A stretch of DNA of 57,673 bases, counting the filler, from Sluysia triapertura (lineage: Eukaryota), in NCBI GenBank assembly GCA_046118255.1. It is 5 parts of 5 records of this genome, joined end to end, with 100 filler letters (N's around TTAATTAATTAA, not from the genome) between each part and the next. Parts side by side here need not be neighbours in the genome. Positions count along the whole stretch, not along the records: positions 1 to 11,245 come from JBJNIA010186869.1; 4 more parts are not named here. The stretch is one strand, 5' to 3'. Every line of letters begins with the position of its first letter. The stretch's first letter is position 1. The position numbers were made by a program, and so were the translations under genes. Positions 1-11,245 of this stretch are shown piece after piece. Below the pieces are notes generated by a model that saw only the letters and a program-made list of their open reading frames with translations, was not told the DNA's origin and did no database searches.

Positions 1-580
1 AAATTTTAAAATGATATTACGCAACCCTTGTATGGTGTTGCTTTAAAATAAAAAATATTTTAAGTAGGATTTTTTGATTCCCAAATGGTGAATCGCCCTT
101 ATAAAAATAACAATTACTTGTTCATGGAAAATCTAAAGTTGAAAAAATCTTCGGACACTTGAATATTCTTCGGCAAATTTTCCTAAAAATTTTTCTAAAA
201 ATTTTTTGTGAAACTTATATTAAAATCTTACCCTATTTATAGATATTTTAGTGTCTTCCATTTTTTCTTTATTCCATTTAATAAAATTATTTTAATAAAA
301 CAAAAGTAAAATTTTCTTTATTTTTAAAAATTATAAAATTCTTTAAATTTAAACTTTATTTTTATTTAAATTTATTAATTTTTAAAGTTTTAATTTAAAT
401 TTTATTTTATTTAAATTTAAATTAATTTTTTAAATTAATTTAAATTTTTTATTTACTTAAATTAATTATTTTGTAATTTTGTAAATTAATATTTTTTTAT
501 AATATAATAATGATAATAATTTATAAAATAAATAACTATTCAAATATACAATTATATACAATTAATAATTAATTCTGACA
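1..580 (-). mobile_element. LTR-like repeat (family B), partial, apparently inserted into the Gypsy polyprotein ORF
   Basis: Minus strand starts TGTCAG at 580, then an AT-rich tract and TATAAATAG (~233-241). Bases ~15-130 align by eye with 10760-10870. Coding-like sequence starts immediately at 581. Confidence 0.5.
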
Positions 581-1802: not shown

Positions 1803-2100
1803 TCGAATAGACCAATAGTAAACACTAGAATAAACATTAGAGTAGTAACGGCACTAATTGATACAGGAGCAGTAGCCTCCCTAATAAACGAAATAAAGAT
1901 GAATTAAAAAATTTAGCTAATCATATTTCTCATTTATCAGGAGTTACAGGCGATACCATTAATATAACCGGAGTGATGAAAGCTATATGTGAGATAGGAC
2001 AAAACAAGCTAGAAATTAAATTAAGAGTTATGAAAAAATGTCCAGAAGAAATGATAATGGGAATGGACATTCTGTCTCAATTAAAAGAAGTAACACTAGA
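1803..2100 (+). pseudogene. Retroviral-type aspartic protease (PR1)
   Basis: RPIVNTRINIRVVTALIDTGAVASLI (Asp codon 1860-1862); after a frameshift LSGVTG..ITG..EMIMGMDILSQL. Confidence 0.9.
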
Positions 2101-2149
2101 TTTCGACCAAGTTAAATTAATGTATAGTCGATCAAAGAGAGCTATTGAT

Positions 2150-2410
2150 GATGATGTATACGTCGATAAACCAATTTGGTTAGTAAAAAGAAGTGAATAT
2201 ATAATTCATGTCAAGACAAACAGTCTATTAACTGGAAATATCATGTTCATTGCATCAGAGGTCAACCAAGAGAAACTAGACATAGGAATAGCTAATGCAG
2301 TGTGCAATAATTGCGAAGGAAAAATACCAGTTCGGATTATAAACTATACAAATGACAATAAATGGATTTATACATGGACAAAATTAGGAAAAATAGTCAA
2401 ATATACGATA
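2150..2410 (+). pseudogene. dUTPase-like linker domain between PR and RT
   Basis: IGIANAV..GKIPVRIINYTNDNKWIYTWTKLGKI resembles the degenerate dUTPase-fold segment of many Gypsy pol proteins. Confidence 0.5.
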
Positions 2411-2589
2411 CCGCCACACATTAACTTAATTTCCGAAAACAAAAACGAAAACAAGATAAAGAGTAATTAAAATTACAACATGAAATAAAAGATGATGATT
2501 ACAGCGAAATAGTTATTACTAATAAGAACTTAACTAAGAAACAGATTGATCAATTATATAGTGTTATTTACCGATATCGAATTTAATGT

Positions 2590-3050
2590 CGAATTTAAAT
2601 GGACTAATGAACAAACTAATGCATTTAAGGAACTGAAAGAACGATTGACAACGGCACCAATATTAATTTTTCCGGATATTAACAAACCATTTATATTGAC
2701 TACTGATACTAGTAACTATGCTATTGGTGCGATTTTAGGCCAAAAAGACAAAAACAATTTAGAAGCAGTAATTACTTATGCCAGTCGACGTTTGAATAAG
2801 GCCGAGATGAATTATTCGACCATTGAAAGAGAATGTTTGGCTATTGTACACGCTTGCAAATTATTTAGACATTATTATTGGGACAGAAAGCTTATTTATA
2901 TACCGATCACAAGCCCCTAACATATTTATATAATTATAGAGATGAGGTCAGCCGATTAAGCAGATGGTTTAATAAATTAGCAGAATTTAATTTAGAAGTC
3001 ATTTATAAACCAGGCCCTCAAAACAATGGCGCGGATTCTATGTCACGCTT
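2590..3050 (+). pseudogene. pol: Gypsy RT connection and RNase H
   Basis: FKWTNEQTNAFKELKERLTTAPIL..FILTTDTSNYAIGAILGQ..YASRRLNKAEMNYSTIERECLAIV..(frameshift) YTDHKPL..YKPG..ADSMSR. Confidence 0.95.
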
Positions 3051-3088
3051 GACTAATGTAGATGATAAGGAAAATATTAATTTTATAC

Positions 3089-3251
3089 TGCTAGACTTCG
3101 TAAAATGGACTGACCGGGGATCGAACCCGGGACCATCGTCTGCGCAGTCCGACTGCTCTACCACTGAGCTCTCAGCCCCGTCCAACAATTTCAGTTTTAT
3201 TATATTCAATTTTATCAAATGGCACTTTTTTTTAGGCCTTTTACCCCAACA
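3089..3251 (-). mobile_element. 163-bp TG...CA mini-element (solo-LTR-like) carrying a tRNA-like gene
   Basis: Flanked by ATAC at 3085-3088 and 3252-3255. Termini TGCTAG...CCAACA are an imperfect inverted repeat. Excision restores the pol frame (NFI-QIMSISGK). Second copy at ~41784-41923. Confidence 0.85.
3106..3178 (-). ncRNA. tRNA-like sequence with non-canonical anticodon arm, followed by TTTT
   Basis: GGGCTGA/TCAGTCC acceptor stem, GCTC-AGTGGTA-GAGC D arm, CCGGG-TTCGATC-CCCGG T arm. Anticodon region irregular (GACTGCGCAGA, loosely Cys-like); isotype not assignable. Confidence 0.7.
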
Positions 3252-3255
3252 ATAC

Positions 3256-4430
3256 AAATAATGTCAATATCAGGAAAAGTACAGGATACTAAAGAAATTA
3301 TTAAACATCAAAGAGAGGATAAGGAAACCGCTTATATTATAGATTCGCTAGCAAAGGGAACGTTAATCGAAAGCCAAGCAAATAGGTTAGCTATTACTGA
3401 CGGAATACTCAGATTCAGAAATTCGAAAGGTGAATTAGGCGGTCATTTATCTAAGAGAAAGACACTATCTAGAATAAAAGACAAATATTATTGGGAAGAT
3501 ATGGAAGATGATATTACAAATTGGTATAAAGATTGTTCAATATGTTGTAGAAGAAAAAATATGGGAACAAGAACAAAGGTACCATTAAAACCTATGCATG
3601 TACCATTGTCACTAATGGAATTTACAGCAATGGACATAATCGGACCACTACCGGAAACTATCAGTGGAAACAAGTATATTATTGTGTTTGCTGACTATTT
3701 AACTAAATGGCCTGAAGCATATCCAATGCCGAATCAAAAAGCAGAAACTGTAGCACAAATATTGGTAGAAAAAATAATATACAGGTATGGTACACCAAGA
3801 AAATTATTAACTGATCAAGGTACAAATTTTACTGGTGATGTAATCAAATCAGTAGCAATAATATTTTATATTCTTAGAATTCATACATCACCTTACCATC
3901 CACAAACTGACGGATTAGTCGAACGATTTAATCGAGCATTGATAAATATGTTACAATCCTATATTAATGACAGACAATCCGATTGGGATTTATACATTTC
4001 ACCATGTTTATTTGCCTGTACGTGGTTCTGTACATCCAGCTACGAATTTTATACCATTTTACTTAATGTAGGGACGGCATTCTAATATGCCTGTAGATTT
4101 AGAATGGATACCACCAACGTCACAATACATGGAAACTCCGGAATATGTAACAGTAATGCATGAGAGATTACAAGATGCATGGAAACGTGCTGGATTGCAA
4201 ATAAAATTTTCACAAGGAGTATACAAAGACACTTATGATAAAAAAGCCAAACAACACACTTTTCAAATCGGTGACAAAGTACTTATTGAATATCCTGACA
4301 AAACCTGGACAATCACCAAAATTACATAAACCATTCAAAGGACCATACAAAGTAATAAAAATTACCGATACTAATTTATTTGTCAAAGACACTATTAAAT
4401 CAGATTCCGAAACATTTATAGTTCATGTAA
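3256..4430 (+). pseudogene. pol: Gypsy integrase (partial HHCC, DDE core, GPY/F)
   Basis: GGHL..YYW..CSIC; AMDIIGPLP; LLTDQGTNF; HPQTDGLVERFNR; frameshifted tail FQIGDKVL..KLHKPFKGPYKV..IVHVNRCK. Confidence 0.95.
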
Positions 4431-4589: not shown

Positions 4590-4910
4590 ACACATATCTT
4601 TCAAAACGTACGATTTAATGGTAGATGAACCGGAGCTACCACATCTGTAATACATTATAATTTTTTAATTACATGGGAAGTTGTACTTATAGGTCCACCA
4701 CAAACGATAATTTACAATGTTCAACGAGCACCTATACATATGAATGGAATAATACACGCGCATTTACATGTATTAGACAAACAAGTAAATGAGTATATTT
4801 ACGTTTGGGGAGAATCTCCTTTCGATTTAATAATTGGTTTAAATTAGATGATATAGTTATACATAGTAAATACGGACTTATGAAATGTCCATACGGTACA
4901 CAATTACTAG
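4590..4910 (+). pseudogene. Second retropepsin-like aspartic protease (PR2) downstream of integrase
   Basis: One frame reads QNVRFNGR*TGATTSVIHYNFL..IIYNVQRAPIHMNGIIHAHLHVLDKQVNEYIYVWGESPFDLIIGLN. It has (D)TGA and DLIIG motifs; the Asp codon is disrupted at ~4624-4629. Confidence 0.7.
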
Positions 4911-5109
4911 TCCCACAAATTATTGTTCTATCTCTTCATAATGATATTACTCCAATTCATATTCCTACACCTGAACTCCCATCTGGCCGATTAACTGATT
5001 TATGTCATCAGTAACAAGTGAATTTTCAGAATCATTGTCATCAGGAATCGGTTCTGTCGAGACAGTAATGCTCACTTTCTCCAGTAAAAATAATAATAAG
5101 ACTAAGAAA

Positions 5110-5689
5110 TCATTCTGGACCTCATTATTAATATTAATAGTTCTATTTATAACTTTAATTGGTACAGTTAAATCAATAGATATTGAGGAATATTAGGAAT
5201 ATAGGAACTTATATGCCGCAATTAATAATGGAAAGACAAAAAAATATCGATTACAAATATATATAATGAGTATTGGGAAATGAAATTCAATTCAAAGAAA
5301 ATGTTTATACGTCATAAATTCGATATTTACTGCATTTATTTGAAACCGTTATTCATCGGAAAACCACATCATGTAGATAAAATACCACGATGTTTGCAAT
5401 ATGCAATAAACCAATGTTAGTAGCATTTTCATTGGACACTAAAAGAAATATAAGAAAAGTGCAAAATTTCATACAAAATATAACAAATAAAGTCATAAAG
5501 AATTGTACAACTAAGTTCAAAGCTAGCACACTATTATCTAACGATACTATGTATAATATTTTTACTTTAGTTCATAAGTTAATTATTATCTCAGTAATTC
5601 TTATAGTGGTATATGACATATGGATTATATTGCACATAGTTGACTTCAGTAAAAAAAACTACGAACAAGTAATATTAATAAAAAATTGA
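5110..5689 (+). pseudogene. Accessory membrane module 1 (signal peptide, ectodomain, TM), unknown function
   Basis: FWTSLLILIVLFITLIGTVKS|IDIEEY, then a disrupted ectodomain and TM LIIISVILIVVYDIWIIL. Confidence 0.5.
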
Positions 5690-6217
5690 TACATCTAACG
5701 ATAATGATGATAATCACTACAGCCCACTGTAATACTCATAATGTATTACTCATAATGTAATACTCATAATTACGACGCTGAGGTCAGAATCAAAGTATTA
5801 CAAAGTGACATTCAAGTTAGATTTTCTTGCTTAAAACCCGCACGATTTAATTTCAGCTCATGGGAAGTACAACAATATTATATCAATGATAGAGCAAATC
5901 CTGTCGCCATATGCCCTGATTTTCTACAAAACGAAGAAAGACACATTGTTGCAAGAATATATATAGCACCAGCTAAGATAGAACAATTACATTTTGCGTT
6001 AAAAGGAAAACGAAAATATTTGTCATTATCAGAAATGCTACGAAATGACCCGGAATTATTAATTTTAATTTTAGCTGGAATATTATTTGTTATTGCACTA
6101 TGCATTGTTATACTTGTAATTATTATGTTCATATCAAATAGATGTAGGTACCCATGTTTACCATATAATCGTGACGATGATGACAATCAATACACCATTC
6201 CGCATAGGACTAATTAA
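5690..6217 (+). pseudogene. Accessory type-I membrane module 2, unknown function
   Basis: Frame open from 5756 to 6217 (CNTHNYDAEVRIKVLQSDIQVRFSC..TM LLILILAGILFVIALCIVILVIIMFI..CRYPC). Signal-like LIHLTIMMIITTAHC is rejoined if two copies of the 14-bp repeat are removed. Confidence 0.6.
5728..5769. repeat. 14-bp tandem repeat x3 (TGTAATACTCATAA)
   Basis: Three adjacent copies, one mismatch; they cause a frameshift in module 2. Confidence 0.9.
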
Positions 6218-6307
6218 TGAACCGCCACCAGGATTTCAAGTAAGACCAACCCTGTCTACGAGTACGCAACAAATAAACATTCACCTTTAGTATACGGAGG
6301 ATGGCAA

Positions 6308-7242
6308 GTGACTAGTTTACAATCTGTCATGCTAGCATGTATATGTATGACTTGTATAATTAACGTATATGCAAAATCGATAATAATAAAGCCACATATT
6401 GCATTAAAAGTATTACAACGCACGATATATGCAAAGATAAGAAGCGATACTGCTATAGTCACTAATATTACTATGCACTGTTGTTTGACTAAATGGTGCA
6501 ATCATGAATCAGACGTTAGCAAATATACCAAGTACTGGATTGCATCTTGTGATGGTCTTATGGAAAATCAATAATTCAACGTCACTCTACATTTAGAATT
6601 TATGACAAATTGGGATTCGACAACCAAGTTTATATGTATGTACAGGATTTTCTTTTAGTTAGTCATCTTACAATAACTATTAAGTTCTTAATGACATTGT
6701 ATAGGGAGAACAATAACTTCGTTCATACATTAATTCCCTTAATAAAACATAATATATTAATAGGTTACGAATCAAATAAAAAGAATCTTACTAGTGATAA
6801 TTTTGACGCTCTTTTTGATAAAGAACAACATTATGCACTAATATTACCCAACACCAGTATTCATTTATTCTTTGTACCAGAACGCAATTTCACACTTATT
6901 GAAATTTGGATTCTACGTTATAACGAGATCCACGATATTCCTGGATTCTGGCCAGAGTATAGAGTATGCGATCTAGTGGTGCCAATCTTAGACAAGTCAG
7001 ATGTTCTAAATTATCCATCACCAGTTACGACCACTACTATTTTAAGTATATTAAAAACTATAAGTTATACTAGAACCACCAACTATGTCACTAGACCAAG
7101 TAAGAATATAAGTCTACAATCTTATAATTACTTGTGTTTAAGCCATCCGATCATCTCTACAAATTTATATCGCACTATTCTTAGTTATTACATTTTATTA
7201 AGTTTTCTTTTCGTTACTTCATTTATACACATTATATTCTAA
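6308..7242 (+). pseudogene. Accessory secreted/membrane module 3 with Thr-rich stalk and C-terminal hydrophobic anchor
   Basis: VMLACICMTCIINVYA|KSIIIKPHIALKVLQ.., Cys-containing ectodomain, PSPVTTTT stalk, terminal ILSYYILLSFLFVTSFIHIIF*; stop/frameshift near 6574-6610. Confidence 0.55.
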
Positions 7243-7472
7243 GTTCATAAGTTTTATTTATTTATAAGGCATAAAAATCAGTTTTTCATTAAAGTATAAA
7301 TTATAAAAGGCATAAAATGTGAGTGATAGCATTTCCCTGTTTACTAACCATGTGTGACGGCTGTTAACTTTCAATTCTCGGTTGTGGACAGGACAGCGTT
7401 GGAGCTCATATTTTAGTAAAATAACATACGCTATTTAGTTAAGAAGAAGTTTTACTAGCATAATTAGTTAAA

Positions 7473-7919: not shown

Positions 7920-8063
7920 AACGCTAGTATATTTCCTAATTATTATCGCTTATTATAGTACTAAAGTACATTGAAACATAAAAAATTACTTTTTAACATT
8001 TTTCTTTTATTTTTACGAATTTTCCTCTTTATGTAAATTTTAAATTATTTTCATAATCCAGCA

Positions 8064-8563
8064 CACATCGAGTCAAAATACCCCAAGCCAGAACCATCAA
8101 CCAAATCAAAATCTTTTACTAATCTATTGATAAATTCTGCGTAGAGAATACTACTCCTAAATTCTTTTCTAATTCCTTTGCCACGGACTGTAAACTGAAA
8201 TCCGAATTAACTGACAATGTGGCAACCAACATTTTTGCTTTATCATCAGAGATGCCTTTTACTTCCTTACAGGGCTTGACCAATGCGCCTGACGAATTTG
8301 AGACAATGCACATAGTAGCTGCACGAGTGACAATTAAGGTCACTCTAGAGGTTGAAGGAATCCCTTTATTATTACGCCTAGAAAATCACTCGACCCTCCA
8401 TCTATAAAATCTAAATATAAATCTTGTAAGGTAATGATGAAAGCCCTTTAATTCCAAACTTTTCTTTTTGTTCTGCCTTCTAATCCTCTTTTTGTTCTGC
8501 CTTCTAATCCTCTTTTTGTTCTGCCTTCTAATCCTCTTTTTGTTCTGCCTTCTAATCCTCTTT
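8064..8563 (-). pseudogene. Possible antisense accessory ORF with basic KRIRRQNK repeats
   Basis: One minus frame reads (KRIRRQNK)x4-KKSLELKGFHHYLTRF..VE*FSRRNNKG..VKPCKEVKGISDDKAKMLV..; a single internal stop. Confidence 0.35.
8464..8563. repeat. 24-bp perfect tandem repeat, at least 4 copies, running into an assembly gap
   Basis: Unit CTTTTTGTTCTGCCTTCTAATCCT. Confidence 0.95.
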
Positions 8564-8959
8564 NNNNNNNNNNNNNNNNNNNNNNNNNNNNNNNNNNNNN
8601 NNNNNNNNNNNNNNNNNNNNNNNNNNNNNNNNNNNNNNNNNNNNNNNNNNNNNNNNNNNNNNNTTGCTCTCTTTTTCCTCCCGTTTGCAGTGGATGGGAA
8701 GGCGGCTCATCATATACGCACGTTCCGCCCCTTTCTGCGTATGATGAGGAAAGACTTATGTTTGTGGCTTTTCAATATGCCACAGATTTCTTGAATAACC
8801 CTCAACTAATTTGTGTGACCTGTACTCCGTAAAGTCGTCAATTTCACACTGAGCCCCCATCAAACCTCGATGCCGTATCCAAAATTTGAGGCGCAACGTT
8901 CAAACGATCACGGACGTCGATCATAGGTTGGCTAAGGACATGGACGAGGTCCCCCGCAA

Positions 8960-9478
8960 TTGATAGGGATTTTACGTAATAAAATCCTAGTAGCGCTGAA
9001 TCCCAAATTTATTATTAATGCCTTAAACATTCCCTTCGGGTTGCTGAGAGGGATCATTAATTTATCAAACCATAATTTGGTTCCGTTTGCCACTGACGAT
9101 CCTTTTATTAGAGCACGTCAAACAGTGCGACTAATTTTCCATTTTAGTCCAGTGTTGACTTATCGGCAAATGGCATCAGAATTAGTAACCCTGCTTGATT
9201 ATAAAAGGGAGCGAGATTTACAGTTCATTTCTCGCTGTAATAACCCTCCACCCGTTCTCTTTAAGAAACCTTCTACTATCCCTACTTCTAATTCCAAACT
9301 TTCTCCTCCTTCTCCGAAAAAAACTCACATCTTCTTCTTCCCCTTCTACTTCTTTTTCTTTTCTTCCTTAACTTCCACTCCTCATTCGACAAGACAATTC
9401 AACGATTCACCATCATCTGCTCCATCGTTTGCCAAATCATCAGTGAATACTTCATCAGCAACTAAGACTTCATCATAG
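8960..9478 (+). pseudogene. Unknown accessory ORF with Ser/Pro-rich tail, probably part of a longer frameshifted ORF (8664-9650)
   Basis: 172-aa ORF in a locally GC-richer region; no family recognised. Confidence 0.35.
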
Positions 9479-9736
9479 CCAATCCACCACTCACTAAATT
9501 ACCAACGAGTACGACATCAATAAATCATCGAGAAGCACACGAGTTGCAGCTGCTGTCTCCAAAGAAATTTCATAGTGACAATGGTTCCCACTACTTGTTC
9601 CGATACGACTACCTACTCCATGAAGACGACTCGGTGGATTTGGACTGATAATTTAGACTAATATTACAATGATATTTCATAATAATTATGATCTATTTAT
9701 AATAATATGACATTTTTTTCGAGAACGAATTTTCCC

Positions 9737-9751: not shown

Positions 9752-10541
9752 TGTAAAGATTAAATTTTTATAATTACACTTTATGTTTTTATATTTTATG
9801 TATATTTGTTAAAATTTTATATGAAAAAATTATAAATATTATTATTATACTTAAAATAAAAATATAAATTATAAATAAAAATTAAAAATATAAATATAAA
9901 TTAATTTTGTTTAAAATTAAAAGTAAGTTTTTGTTTAAAATAATTAATTAATTTTAAGAAATAAAGAACAATTTTAAATATCTTCATCGTTTTATTACTA
10001 AACTTTGTTGATAGAATTCTCAAATCCCTCACCGGATCTTTAAGTAATCGAATCACTAAATATTGGTTAGCACAAAATGTTTCTTTAATCTGATTAGTTT
10101 CTTGAAAAATAGCTGAAATCTGATCATGTGTAACTAATATTCTACAGAAATAAGAAATATTAAGTTCTGTTGGTTGATCAGTTGCATTCATATTTCCAAT
10201 TAAACATTACTTTTACACTTAATGCTTCACTTATGTTAATCGATTTACTATACTCTTGAGTTAGACTTCCTTCTGCAAGTGTTTCTAAAAACTTAAACTT
10301 ATTTGCAAATTATCTGAGGAGTCGGTTCGCCTAATACATACGATTTATACCACTAATTGGAAACGTACTATTAGGTTTTCTAAATTATACTTAACTAACT
10401 TTTTATTTTATAACTTAAGTCTTATCTTTTATGTCCAGTTGCTTGGAGCACTTTAATTAATTTATACTACAACCCCTTACTAGGTGTTGTTTAATTAAAC
10501 TTTTATATTTTATATTTACGCAACCCATATTAAGGTGTTAC
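9752..10541 (+). mobile_element. 3' LTR of the Gypsy element (3' end uncertain: ..TACTACA 10471 or ..GGTGTTAC 10541)
   Basis: TG start directly after the PPT; AT-rich U3-like tract. Confidence 0.6.
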
Positions 10542-10556
10542 TTTCTCAAAAATTAA

Positions 10557-11245
10557 TGTGAATTTCGATAAAGATAAAGTTTAAACACAATTAATTAAAA
10601 ATGAACTTAAACTGAAACTTTTTATTGCACAAAATGTTAACTTACAAAATTACAATAATAATGAGCTTACAATTAGTTAATAAAACAAAATATAATAATA
10701 ATAATGAATTTAACAAAGTAATTCAACCTCAGTTGATTACAAATAATTTTAGCGTAAGGTTACGCAACTCTTGTTAAGATGTTGCATAAAAAACGAATTT
10801 TCGTTGATTTTTGGATTCCCTTAGAGATGAATCGGACCTTATAAAAAAATTAAATTACTTGTGCATGAACTGATTTACAGTTTTCAATTTTGTCTTCTAA
10901 AAATTCAAATTCTAAATCCTGAACTTGATCTAAAAAAATTGTGTTGAAAATATTTTGCTCACTTCTATTTATATTAATCCAATTGATACTTCCATTTTGT
11001 CAAATATTAATTTAATAAAACAAAATTTGAAAAACAAAGATTTATAAATTTAATAATTTTTTGTTCTAAAAAATGTACTTCACCTTTTATTCAATTTATT
11101 CAATTTTAAGTTTAGTAATTTAATTTTAATTTTAATAGTTTTAATTTTCTAGTTTTTTCTGACTTTGAATTAACGTTTTTATAATTTATTTTATCAAAAA
11201 TATTATTTTAAAATTAATAACTTTTTTATTTTAATTATAATAAAA
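10557..11245 (-). mobile_element. LTR-like repeat (family B), second diverged copy, truncated by spacer
   Basis: Shares TTACGCAAC..GTTGC, GATTCCC..TGAATCG..CCTTATAAAAA..AATTACTTGT and the minus-strand TATAAATAG with 1-300. Boundaries approximate. Confidence 0.5.

What the first reader, a model, noticed from the sequence alone, without database searches (positions are those of the whole stretch)
3085..3255. 163-bp TG...CA mobile unit that carries its own tRNA-like Pol III gene
Seen: exact 4-bp TSD (ATAC), TG/CA ends, and removal restores the pol frame, so this is a true insertion. The tRNA-like part is internal (73 bp of conserved leader), is followed directly by TTTT, and has no tail. A second copy shares the same terminus. 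Known: SINEs start with the tRNA head and end in a tail, whereas TG..CA with a 4-6 bp TSD marks integrase products; plant Cassandra TRIMs carry 5S rRNA in their LTRs. Inference: solo LTR of a TRIM-like family with a tRNA in the LTR, possibly supplying a Pol III promoter or its own RT primer.
Basis: partly seen in the sequence, partly recalled or inferred. Interest (0 to 1): 0.85.

Follow-up and report, generated by a model that had tools for sequence, protein, structure and literature searches.

The report
Solo LTR carrying a tRNA-like promoter
A 163-bp insertion inside a dead retrotransposon gene is most likely the single leftover end-repeat (solo LTR) of a miniature retrotransposon whose repeats carry a tRNA-like RNA polymerase III promoter; this kind of element was described in 2024 as "Helenus", so it is probably a new family of a known kind.

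Summary
Window 3089-3251 is a 163-bp TG...CA unit flanked by exact ATAC repeats (3085-3088, 3252-3255). It interrupts the RNase H-integrase linker of a degraded Ty3/gypsy pol, and taking out 167 bp puts the two pol ORFs back in one frame. On the minus strand the unit reads: 73-nt AT-rich leader, 73-nt tRNA-like cloverleaf (Rfam tRNA 45.6 bits; good box A and box B; broken anticodon stem), TTTT, then 13 nt ending in CA. These are TRIMs whose 104-323-bp TG...CA LTRs carry a sense tRNA-like sequence followed by a T-run. Animal families make 4-bp TSDs, and solo LTRs are common. Twenty-four k-mers from the unit were looked up in the paper's consensus file; none pointed to a published family apart from a tail 10-mer, a weak lead. 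I found no second copy in the window, metagenome, viral or prokaryote collections, or in protein space. So pairing with a PBS and PPT, copy number and the host organism remain untested. Verdict: probable solo LTR of a new Helenus-type (TRIMp3) family. The "own RT primer" idea was not borne out in published Helenus.

The parts
3085..3088 (.). Left copy of the 4-bp target-site duplication (ATAC)
   Evidence: Read directly from the sequence
3252..3255 (.). Right copy of the 4-bp target-site duplication (ATAC)
   Evidence: Read directly from the sequence
3089..3251 (-). 163-bp inserted unit, putative solo LTR. On the minus strand it reads 5'-TGTTGGGG...TCTAGCA-3'.
   Evidence: The layout matches Helenus LTRs.
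3179..3251 (-). 73-nt AT-rich leader (30% GC), U3-like, upstream of the tRNA-like part
3195..3204 (-). TATA-like run TATAATAAAA, starting 26 nt upstream of the tRNA-like +1. A role as an upstream Pol III element is inference only.
   Evidence: position
3106..3178 (-). 73-nt tRNA-like sequence. The acceptor stem (with G3:U70), D arm and T arm are intact. The anticodon stem is reduced to about 3 pairs, with a GCAGTC-N-GACTGC palindrome there.
   Evidence: ARAGORN; Rfam; fold; palindrome
3161..3171 (-). Box A-like GAGCTCAGTGG (consensus TRGCNNAGTGG; the first base is G, not T)
   Evidence: Sequence; consensus from general knowledge
3118..3127 (-). Box B GGTTCGATCC, a perfect match to GGTTCGANNCC
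   Evidence: Sequence
3102..3105 (-). TTTT directly after the discriminator A, a Pol III terminator-like run
   Evidence: T-runs sit at the same place in Helenus LTRs
3089..3101 (-). 13-nt terminal tail ACGAAGTCTAGCA (U5-like), ending in CA
2534..3088 (+). Target gene, upstream side: RNase H domain of a degraded Ty3/gypsy pol, in two frames with a shift near 2878-2920
   Evidence: Pfam RT_RNaseH_2 1.8e-37 and RT_RNaseH
3256..4085 (+). Target gene, downstream side: linker plus integrase (H2C2 zinc finger and rve core)
   Evidence: Pfam; homologues

Best explanation
The 163-bp unit is most likely a solo LTR of a small non-autonomous LTR retrotransposon of the Helenus type (TRIMp3), that is, a TRIM whose LTRs carry a tRNA-derived Pol III promoter module. 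Proposed history, all inferred: a full element (LTR-PBS-short internal part-PPT-LTR) was reverse-transcribed. A Gypsy-type integrase supplied in trans then inserted it, antisense, into the RNase H-integrase linker of a Ty3/gypsy copy, duplicating 4 bp (ATAC). Later recombination between its two LTRs removed the internal part and left one LTR between the original TSDs. Proposed working of the family, also inferred: boxes A and B recruit TFIIIC and Pol III. Transcription would start at the tRNA-like +1, so the 73-nt leader acts as U3, the tRNA-like part up to the T-run as R, and the 13-nt tail as U5. The weak T4 run would have to be read through in the 5' LTR and used in the 3' LTR. The tRNA-like part serves as a promoter, not as a working tRNA or a primer. 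What is shown: the insertion, its exact ends, the TSD, the cloverleaf, boxes A and B, and the T-run. Everything else is inferred.
For: TG...CA ends with an exact 4-bp TSD, and the local pol frame is restored on removal. The linker length matches homologue P0120 only without the insert. The tRNA-like sequence is significant, with a perfect box B, a near-consensus box A and a degenerate anticodon arm. The published Helenus class has the same layout: LTRs of 104-323 bp, TG...CA ends, a sense tRNA-like sequence after a leader, usually a non-functional tRNA, 4-bp TSDs in animals (Gypsy-mobilised) against 5 bp in fungi and plants, and frequent solo LTRs with TSDs. In the deposited hymenopteran, bivalve and fungal LTR consensus sequences, the tRNA-like part is followed closely by a T-run and then a short tail ending in CA, as here. 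A Gypsy-type integrase lineage is present in this genome.
Against: Only one copy was seen. No second copy exists in the window or in any searchable collection (protein space 27, 50). So multi-copy status, paired LTRs, PBS/PPT and uniform 4-bp TSDs are untested. No published Helenus consensus shares the unit's specific k-mers. The 3' end is ...GCA rather than the common ...ACA. A U5 of 13 nt would be very short. A T4 run inside the 5' LTR is awkward for full-length Pol III transcription. The host organism is unknown, so 'animal, hence 4 bp' cannot be checked.
Confidence: 0.65

Rival explanations
1. It is a solo LTR, but of a larger LTR element (an autonomous Gypsy or a LARD) whose LTR happens to contain a tRNA-derived segment, rather than of a TRIM.
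For: The ends and TSD are the same as in the main reading. Kojima notes that 'not a few' Repbase LTRs contain tRNA-like segments, and only some of these are TRIMs.
Against: At 163 bp the LTR is short for an autonomous element and sits in the middle of the Helenus range. A complete cloverleaf with box A, box B and a T-run fills nearly half the LTR, which is typical of the Pol III-promoter TRIMs. No coding element with this LTR is in the window.
Confidence: 0.12
2. It is an atypical tRNA-derived SINE or other retroposon inserted by a non-LTR (LINE) machinery.
For: It has a tRNA-like module with boxes A and B and is short.
Against: The tRNA-like head is not at the 5' end. An internal Pol III promoter cannot transcribe the 73 nt that lie upstream of it. 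There is no 3' tail on either strand. The TSD is only 4 bp, and the ends are exactly TG...CA.
Confidence: 0.08
3. It is not a mobile element. A double-strand break in the pol gene was repaired by copying a stretch of another locus (a tRNA pseudogene with 73 nt of 5' flank and 17 nt of 3' flank), and ATAC is repair microhomology rather than a TSD.
For: The unit looks like a Pol III gene with its natural context: an AT-rich upstream flank, a TATA-like run at -26 and a TTTT terminator. Only one copy was seen.
Against: The boundaries fall exactly on TG and CA. The layout coincides with a published LTR class. The anticodon arm is degenerate, as in promoter-only modules.
Confidence: 0.08
4. It is a miniature DNA transposon (MITE), for example of a superfamily that makes 4-bp TSDs.
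For: It has a 4-bp TSD, is small, and both ends fit TGYTRG.
Against: There are no terminal inverted repeats: only 6 of the first 20 nt match the reverse complement of the last 20. No inverted-repeat pair was reported around the unit.
Confidence: 0.04

Closest known systems
Helenus (TRIMs with a tRNA-derived sequence in the LTRs; Kojima 2024, Biology 13:119, PMC10886601)
   Same: TG...CA LTR within the 104-323-bp range. The order is leader, sense tRNA-like sequence with boxes A and B, T-run, short tail. The tRNA is probably not functional. The TSD is 4 bp, as in animal families. Solo LTRs flanked by TSDs are common in the class.
   Different: Of 24 k-mers from this unit, the family-specific ones did not match the deposited consensus file; only generic tRNA k-mers, the LTR-start 8-mer TGTTGGGG and one tail 10-mer did. 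The unit is AT-rich, whereas the hymenopteran LTRs read are GC-rich. It starts TGTTGGGG, as several fungal families do, but has the 4-bp TSD of animal families. No paired copy, PBS or PPT was seen, and the host is unknown.
Cassandra (plant TRIM with 5S rRNA-like LTR modules)
   Same: The design principle is the same: a small-RNA-derived Pol III promoter inside the LTR of a TRIM.
   Different: The module is 5S rRNA-derived, not tRNA-derived. Cassandra is restricted to plants and is 565-860 bp long.
Ajax (nemertean TRIM with a partial 5S rRNA promoter in the LTR)
   Same: It belongs to the same TRIMp3 concept.
   Different: It carries a partial 5S promoter, makes 5-bp TSDs, and is known from two nemertean species only.
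tRNA-derived SINEs (SINE2)
   Same: They have a tRNA-like head with boxes A and B. A SINE2 is the proposed donor of the module that was inserted into an ancestral TRIM LTR.
   Different: SINEs start at the tRNA head, end in a tail, and have variable and longer TSDs. None of these applies here.
Canonical TRIMs (Pol II type, 'TRIMp2')
   Same: Short LTRs, non-autonomous, mobilised in trans by LTR-retrotransposon proteins.
   Different: They have no small-RNA-derived module in the LTR.

Membership tests
Helenus / TRIMp3 | LTR-type termini (5'-TG...CA-3') | tested here: met
   3089-3251 reads TG...CA on both strands.
Helenus / TRIMp3 | tRNA-derived sequence with box A and box B inside the LTR | tested here: met
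   ARAGORN; Rfam tRNA 45.6 bits; box B perfect and box A off by one base. In the TGTTGG...GCA reading it is sense, as in the deposited LTRs.
Helenus / TRIMp3 | Two LTRs in direct orientation flanking a PBS and a PPT (TRIM structure) | not testable with these tools
   The window holds a single copy. The source genome is not in any searchable collection.
Helenus / TRIMp3 | Fixed short TSD (4 bp in animal families, 5 bp in fungal and plant families) | tested here: met
   Exact 4-bp ATAC at this one copy; a 5-bp reading fails. Uniformity across copies is untested.
Helenus / TRIMp3 | LTR length within the family range (104-323 bp) | tested here: met
   163 bp against Table S1 and the text.
Helenus / TRIMp3 | Interspersed, multi-copy family | not testable with these tools
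   No other copy was found in metagenome, viral or GTDB collections, or via translated searches.
Any published Helenus family (sequence identity) | Shares family-specific leader, anticodon-region or tail sequence with a deposited consensus | tested here: not met
   24 k-mers were looked up in DataS1.fa. Only generic tRNA k-mers matched, plus the LTR-start 8-mer TGTTGGGG (Helenus-1_CroRib; about 1.3 hits expected by chance), a 9-mer that hit only internal parts of sturgeon families, and one tail 10-mer in Helenus-1_PHord. K-mers that cross FASTA line ends would be missed.
tRNA-derived SINE (SINE2) | tRNA-like head at the 5' end of the element | tested here: not met
   73 nt precede the tRNA-like part.
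tRNA-derived SINE (SINE2) | 3' tail (A-rich or simple repeat) and variable LINE-type TSD | tested here: not met
   No tail on either strand; 4-bp TSD.
Functional tRNA gene | Canonical cloverleaf with a 5-bp anticodon stem, a 7-nt loop and a purine at position 37 | tested here: not met
   The anticodon stem has about 3 pairs, the Rfam alignment shows an 11-nt stretch against 9 in the model, and ARAGORN's GCG reading puts C at position 37.
MITE / DNA transposon | Terminal inverted repeats | tested here: not met
   6 of 20 terminal bases match.

The most novel reading that the evidence does not exclude
The 163-bp unit is itself the whole mobile element. In this reading it is a single LTR-like unit with integrase-type ends and a complete Pol III transcription unit (TATA-like run, boxes A and B, terminator) that an LTR-retrotransposon integrase inserts without ever having a PBS/PPT-bearing internal part. 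Such a hybrid between a SINE and an LTR is not covered by Helenus or Cassandra.
Probability: 0.05. Interest if true: 0.75.

Novelty: new member of a known kind. Interest (0 to 1): 0.3.

Why it matters
If confirmed, this adds a family to the recently defined TRIMp3/Helenus class, possibly from a host lineage outside the 2024 list. The AT-rich composition is unlike the published hymenopteran LTRs I read. The practical point is annotation. Such LTRs are scored as tRNA genes (45.6 bits here) and can inflate tRNA counts by hundreds, as shown for rust fungi. They also scatter potential Pol III promoters and TFIIIC sites through a genome. As a single solo LTR in a dead retrotransposon it has no evident consequence for the host.

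Tried and rejected
Searches for other copies all came back empty.
- Window: both 17-nt termini at up to 3 mismatches, and a word-7 BLAST.
- Metagenome contigs: two patterns. The only hit was a chance 21-mer in a bacterial ABC-permease contig, L003.
- Viral contigs: four DNA patterns and one protein scan.
- GTDB genomes: two patterns.
- Protein space, using the two fully open frames of the unit: the word search found nothing. The HMMER search of 1.84 billion representatives gave three weak hits; the two I compared (P0121, P0122) are unrelated, P0122 being a repeat protein.

Host identification failed.
- Exact-ORF look-ups were not on record.
- The best integrase relatives are unnamed metagenome contigs at 56-69% identity. 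Their accession numbers appear in no paper.
- The 210-aa downstream ORF has no homologue.
- Pfam is blank for the downstream ORFs.

Other ideas I set aside.
- I looked for LTRs of the host Gypsy element and for a PBS and found none convincing.
- The 65%-identical direct repeat 1-516 / 10745-11243 is too diverged to be the LTR pair of an element that still has a 288-codon ORF.
- The MITE reading is rejected for lack of terminal inverted repeats, and the SINE reading for its layout.
- The tail 10-mer shared with Helenus-1_PHord is treated as a weak lead only, given about 24 k-mers tried against 87 kb.

Full report
**What is in the sequence**

The window is AT-rich: 15% GC in the first 500 bp and about 30-37% over the coding parts. 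Positions 2534-4085 on the plus strand encode the RNase H and integrase parts of a Ty3/gypsy-type pol (Pfam RT_RNaseH_2 1.8e-37, Integrase_H2C2 4.3e-13, rve 5.7e-10). The finding lies in the linker between those two domains. ATAC occurs at 3085-3088 and again at 3252-3255, and the 163 bp between them (3089-3251) start with TG and end with CA. Removing 167 bp brings ORF 2878..3261 and ORF 3219..4085 into one frame with no stop at the junction.

I checked this without the joined sequence, by comparing the two pieces separately with a homologue that carries both domains. In P0120, 26 residues lie between the RNase H motif ADALSR and the point where the integrase-side alignment begins. The window has 30 residues there without the insert and about 85 with it. 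This is a genuine insertion into a previously continuous gene.

**Anatomy of the insert**

ARAGORN finds one tRNA in the whole piece, at 3106-3178 on the minus strand. Rfam's tRNA model scores it 45.6 bits (E = 2.8e-07, gathering score 29), and nothing else in the piece matches any Rfam family. Read on the minus strand, the unit has four parts:
- a 73-nt leader of 30% GC that starts TGTTGGGG and holds TATAATAAAA 26 nt upstream of the tRNA-like start;
- the 73-nt tRNA-like part, 64% GC;
- TTTT directly after the discriminator base;
- 13 more nt ending in GCA.

The acceptor stem is perfect, with a G3:U70 pair, and the T arm is canonical. Box B (GGTTCGATCC) is perfect and box A (GAGCTCAGTGG) departs from the consensus only at its first base. 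The anticodon stem keeps about three pairs, and the loop region is two nucleotides longer than in the model. So it is a Pol III promoter-like module rather than a working tRNA. There is no tail on either strand, and the ends are not inverted repeats (6 of 20 bases match).

**What could not be confirmed**

I then tried every collection within reach:
- two exact-pattern scans of metagenome contigs; the only hit, L003, is a chance 21-mer in a GC-rich bacterial transporter operon;
- four pattern scans and one protein scan of viral contigs;
- two scans of prokaryote genomes.

The unit is open in one frame on each strand, so I also searched protein space for ORFs reading through other copies. The word search found nothing. 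The exhaustive HMMER search gave three weak hits; the two I compared (P0121, P0122) are unrelated, P0122 being a repeat protein. Exact-product look-ups of four window ORFs were not on record. The source genome is therefore outside these tools. Copy number, uniformity of ends and TSDs, and pairing remain untested.

**What it most likely is**

Helenus elements are TRIMs whose LTRs contain a tRNA-derived sequence with conserved boxes A and B. Their published properties are these:
- They occur in Pucciniales and some Agaricomycetes fungi, in six animal phyla and in Selaginella.
- LTRs are 104-323 bp.
- Animal families make 4-bp TSDs and appear to be mobilised by Gypsy elements. Fungal and plant families make 5-bp TSDs; the fungal families appear to be mobilised by Copia elements.
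- Most tRNA-like parts are judged non-functional.
- Some families survive only as fragments and solo LTRs flanked by TSDs.

The deposited consensus LTRs that I could read share one layout. They start with TG, run through a leader of about 30-110 nt, then a sense tRNA-like sequence, then a T-run at or near its 3' end, then a short tail ending in CA. The window's unit has this layout on its minus strand, with a length in the middle of the range and a 4-bp TSD.

The best reading is therefore a solo LTR of a Helenus-type (TRIMp3) element. It would have been inserted antisense into a Gypsy pol by an integrase supplied in trans, and later reduced by LTR-LTR recombination.

**How it would work (inferred)**

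Boxes A and B would recruit TFIIIC and Pol III. Transcription from the tRNA-like +1 would make the leader U3, the tRNA-like part R and the 13-nt tail U5. The T4 run would have to be leaky in the 5' LTR. Kojima stresses that Pol III promoter activity is experimentally shown only for Cassandra.

**Membership and novelty**

The features testable on one copy are met: termini, the internal tRNA-like module with boxes A and B, its orientation, length and TSD. The defining TRIM structure (two LTRs, PBS, PPT) and multi-copy status could not be tested.

The unit is not one of the published families as far as k-mer look-ups can tell. I tried 24 k-mers from the unit against the 87-kb consensus file. Matches were limited to these:
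- generic tRNA k-mers;
- the LTR-start 8-mer TGTTGGGG, in Helenus-1_CroRib, where about 1.3 hits are expected by chance;
- a 9-mer that hit only internal parts of sturgeon families;
- one 10-mer of the tail (TCCATTTTAC), which recurs at the equivalent place in Helenus-1_PHord.

I treat the last as a weak lead, given the number of k-mers tried. The hymenopteran LTRs I read are GC-rich with TGTCACG...CGTTACA ends, unlike this unit. I rate it a probable new member of a known kind. Interest is modest.

**Rivals**

- Solo LTR of a larger element with a tRNA-like segment (0.12).
- Atypical SINE (0.08). Against it: the 73 nt upstream of an internal promoter, the missing tail and the 4-bp TSD.
- Break-repair capture of a tRNA-pseudogene locus, with ATAC as microhomology (0.08). 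It cannot be excluded with one copy, but it does not explain the exact TG/CA ends.
- MITE (0.04). There are no terminal inverted repeats.

**State of the target element**

The element is broken in several places, described here only as breaks.
- No reverse-transcriptase domain was found. Only 66 nt separate the 202-aa ORF upstream of RNase H (1862-2467) from the RNase H ORF (2534-2917), and the upstream ORF has no Pfam match.
- The frame shifts within RNase H near 2878-2920.
- About 20 residues present in relative L002 are missing upstream of the integrase zinc finger.

Noticed in passing
window 1862-2917: The host Ty3/gypsy pol has no reverse-transcriptase domain. The 202-aa ORF upstream of RNase H (1862-2467, no Pfam match) ends 66 nt before the RNase H ORF (2534-2917). 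The copy is an internally deleted, non-autonomous derivative.
   Followed up: partly
window 1-516 and 10745-11243: A direct repeat of about 500 bp at 65% identity brackets almost the whole piece. It is AT-rich, so the score is inflated. It is too diverged to be the LTR pair of the Gypsy copy. It may be a dispersed repeat or recurring intergenic architecture.
   Followed up: partly
window 13-52, 10512-10551, 10756-10795: A motif of about 27 nt, TTACGCAACYC...GTGTTRC, with a GCAAC/GTTGC stem potential, occurs three times on the plus strand. Its nature is unknown.
   Followed up: no
window 8463-8563, next to the N gap 8564-8663: A perfect 24-bp tandem repeat (TCTTTTTGTTCTGCCTTCTAATCC, at least 4 copies) runs into the assembly gap.
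   Followed up: no
window 4800-7242: Downstream of integrase lies a string of ORFs, some with long hydrophobic stretches (for example 5002-5196, 5390-5689, 6020-6217, 6610-7242). They have no significant Pfam match, and the 210-aa ORF has no homologue. This may be a decayed env-like region or unrelated sequence.
   Followed up: partly
window 8000-9650: This stretch is richer in GC (35-39%) with strong C-over-G skew on the plus strand. It holds a Ser/Thr/Pro-rich 172-aa ORF (8960-9478) with no Pfam match. It may be a decayed gene or another repeat.
   Followed up: no
window 3144-3156: The anticodon region of the tRNA-like part holds a perfect 6+1+6 palindrome (GCAGTC-C-GACTGC on the plus strand). 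This is what disrupts the normal anticodon stem.
   Followed up: no
L001 (JGI 3300034947, 1242 bp) and L002 (ENA ERZ2271525, 1917 bp): The closest integrase relatives (69% aa identity over 126 residues for L001, 54-56% for L002; about 68% nt identity) sit on short AT-rich (32-36% GC) metagenome contigs of unknown origin. They probably come from related eukaryotes. Neither reaches the insertion site.
   Followed up: partly
window 7319-7392: A stretch of about 72 nt starts GTGAGT, contains TACTAAC and ends ...GGACAG, resembling a short fungal-type intron. It may well be chance and did not help to identify the host.
   Followed up: no
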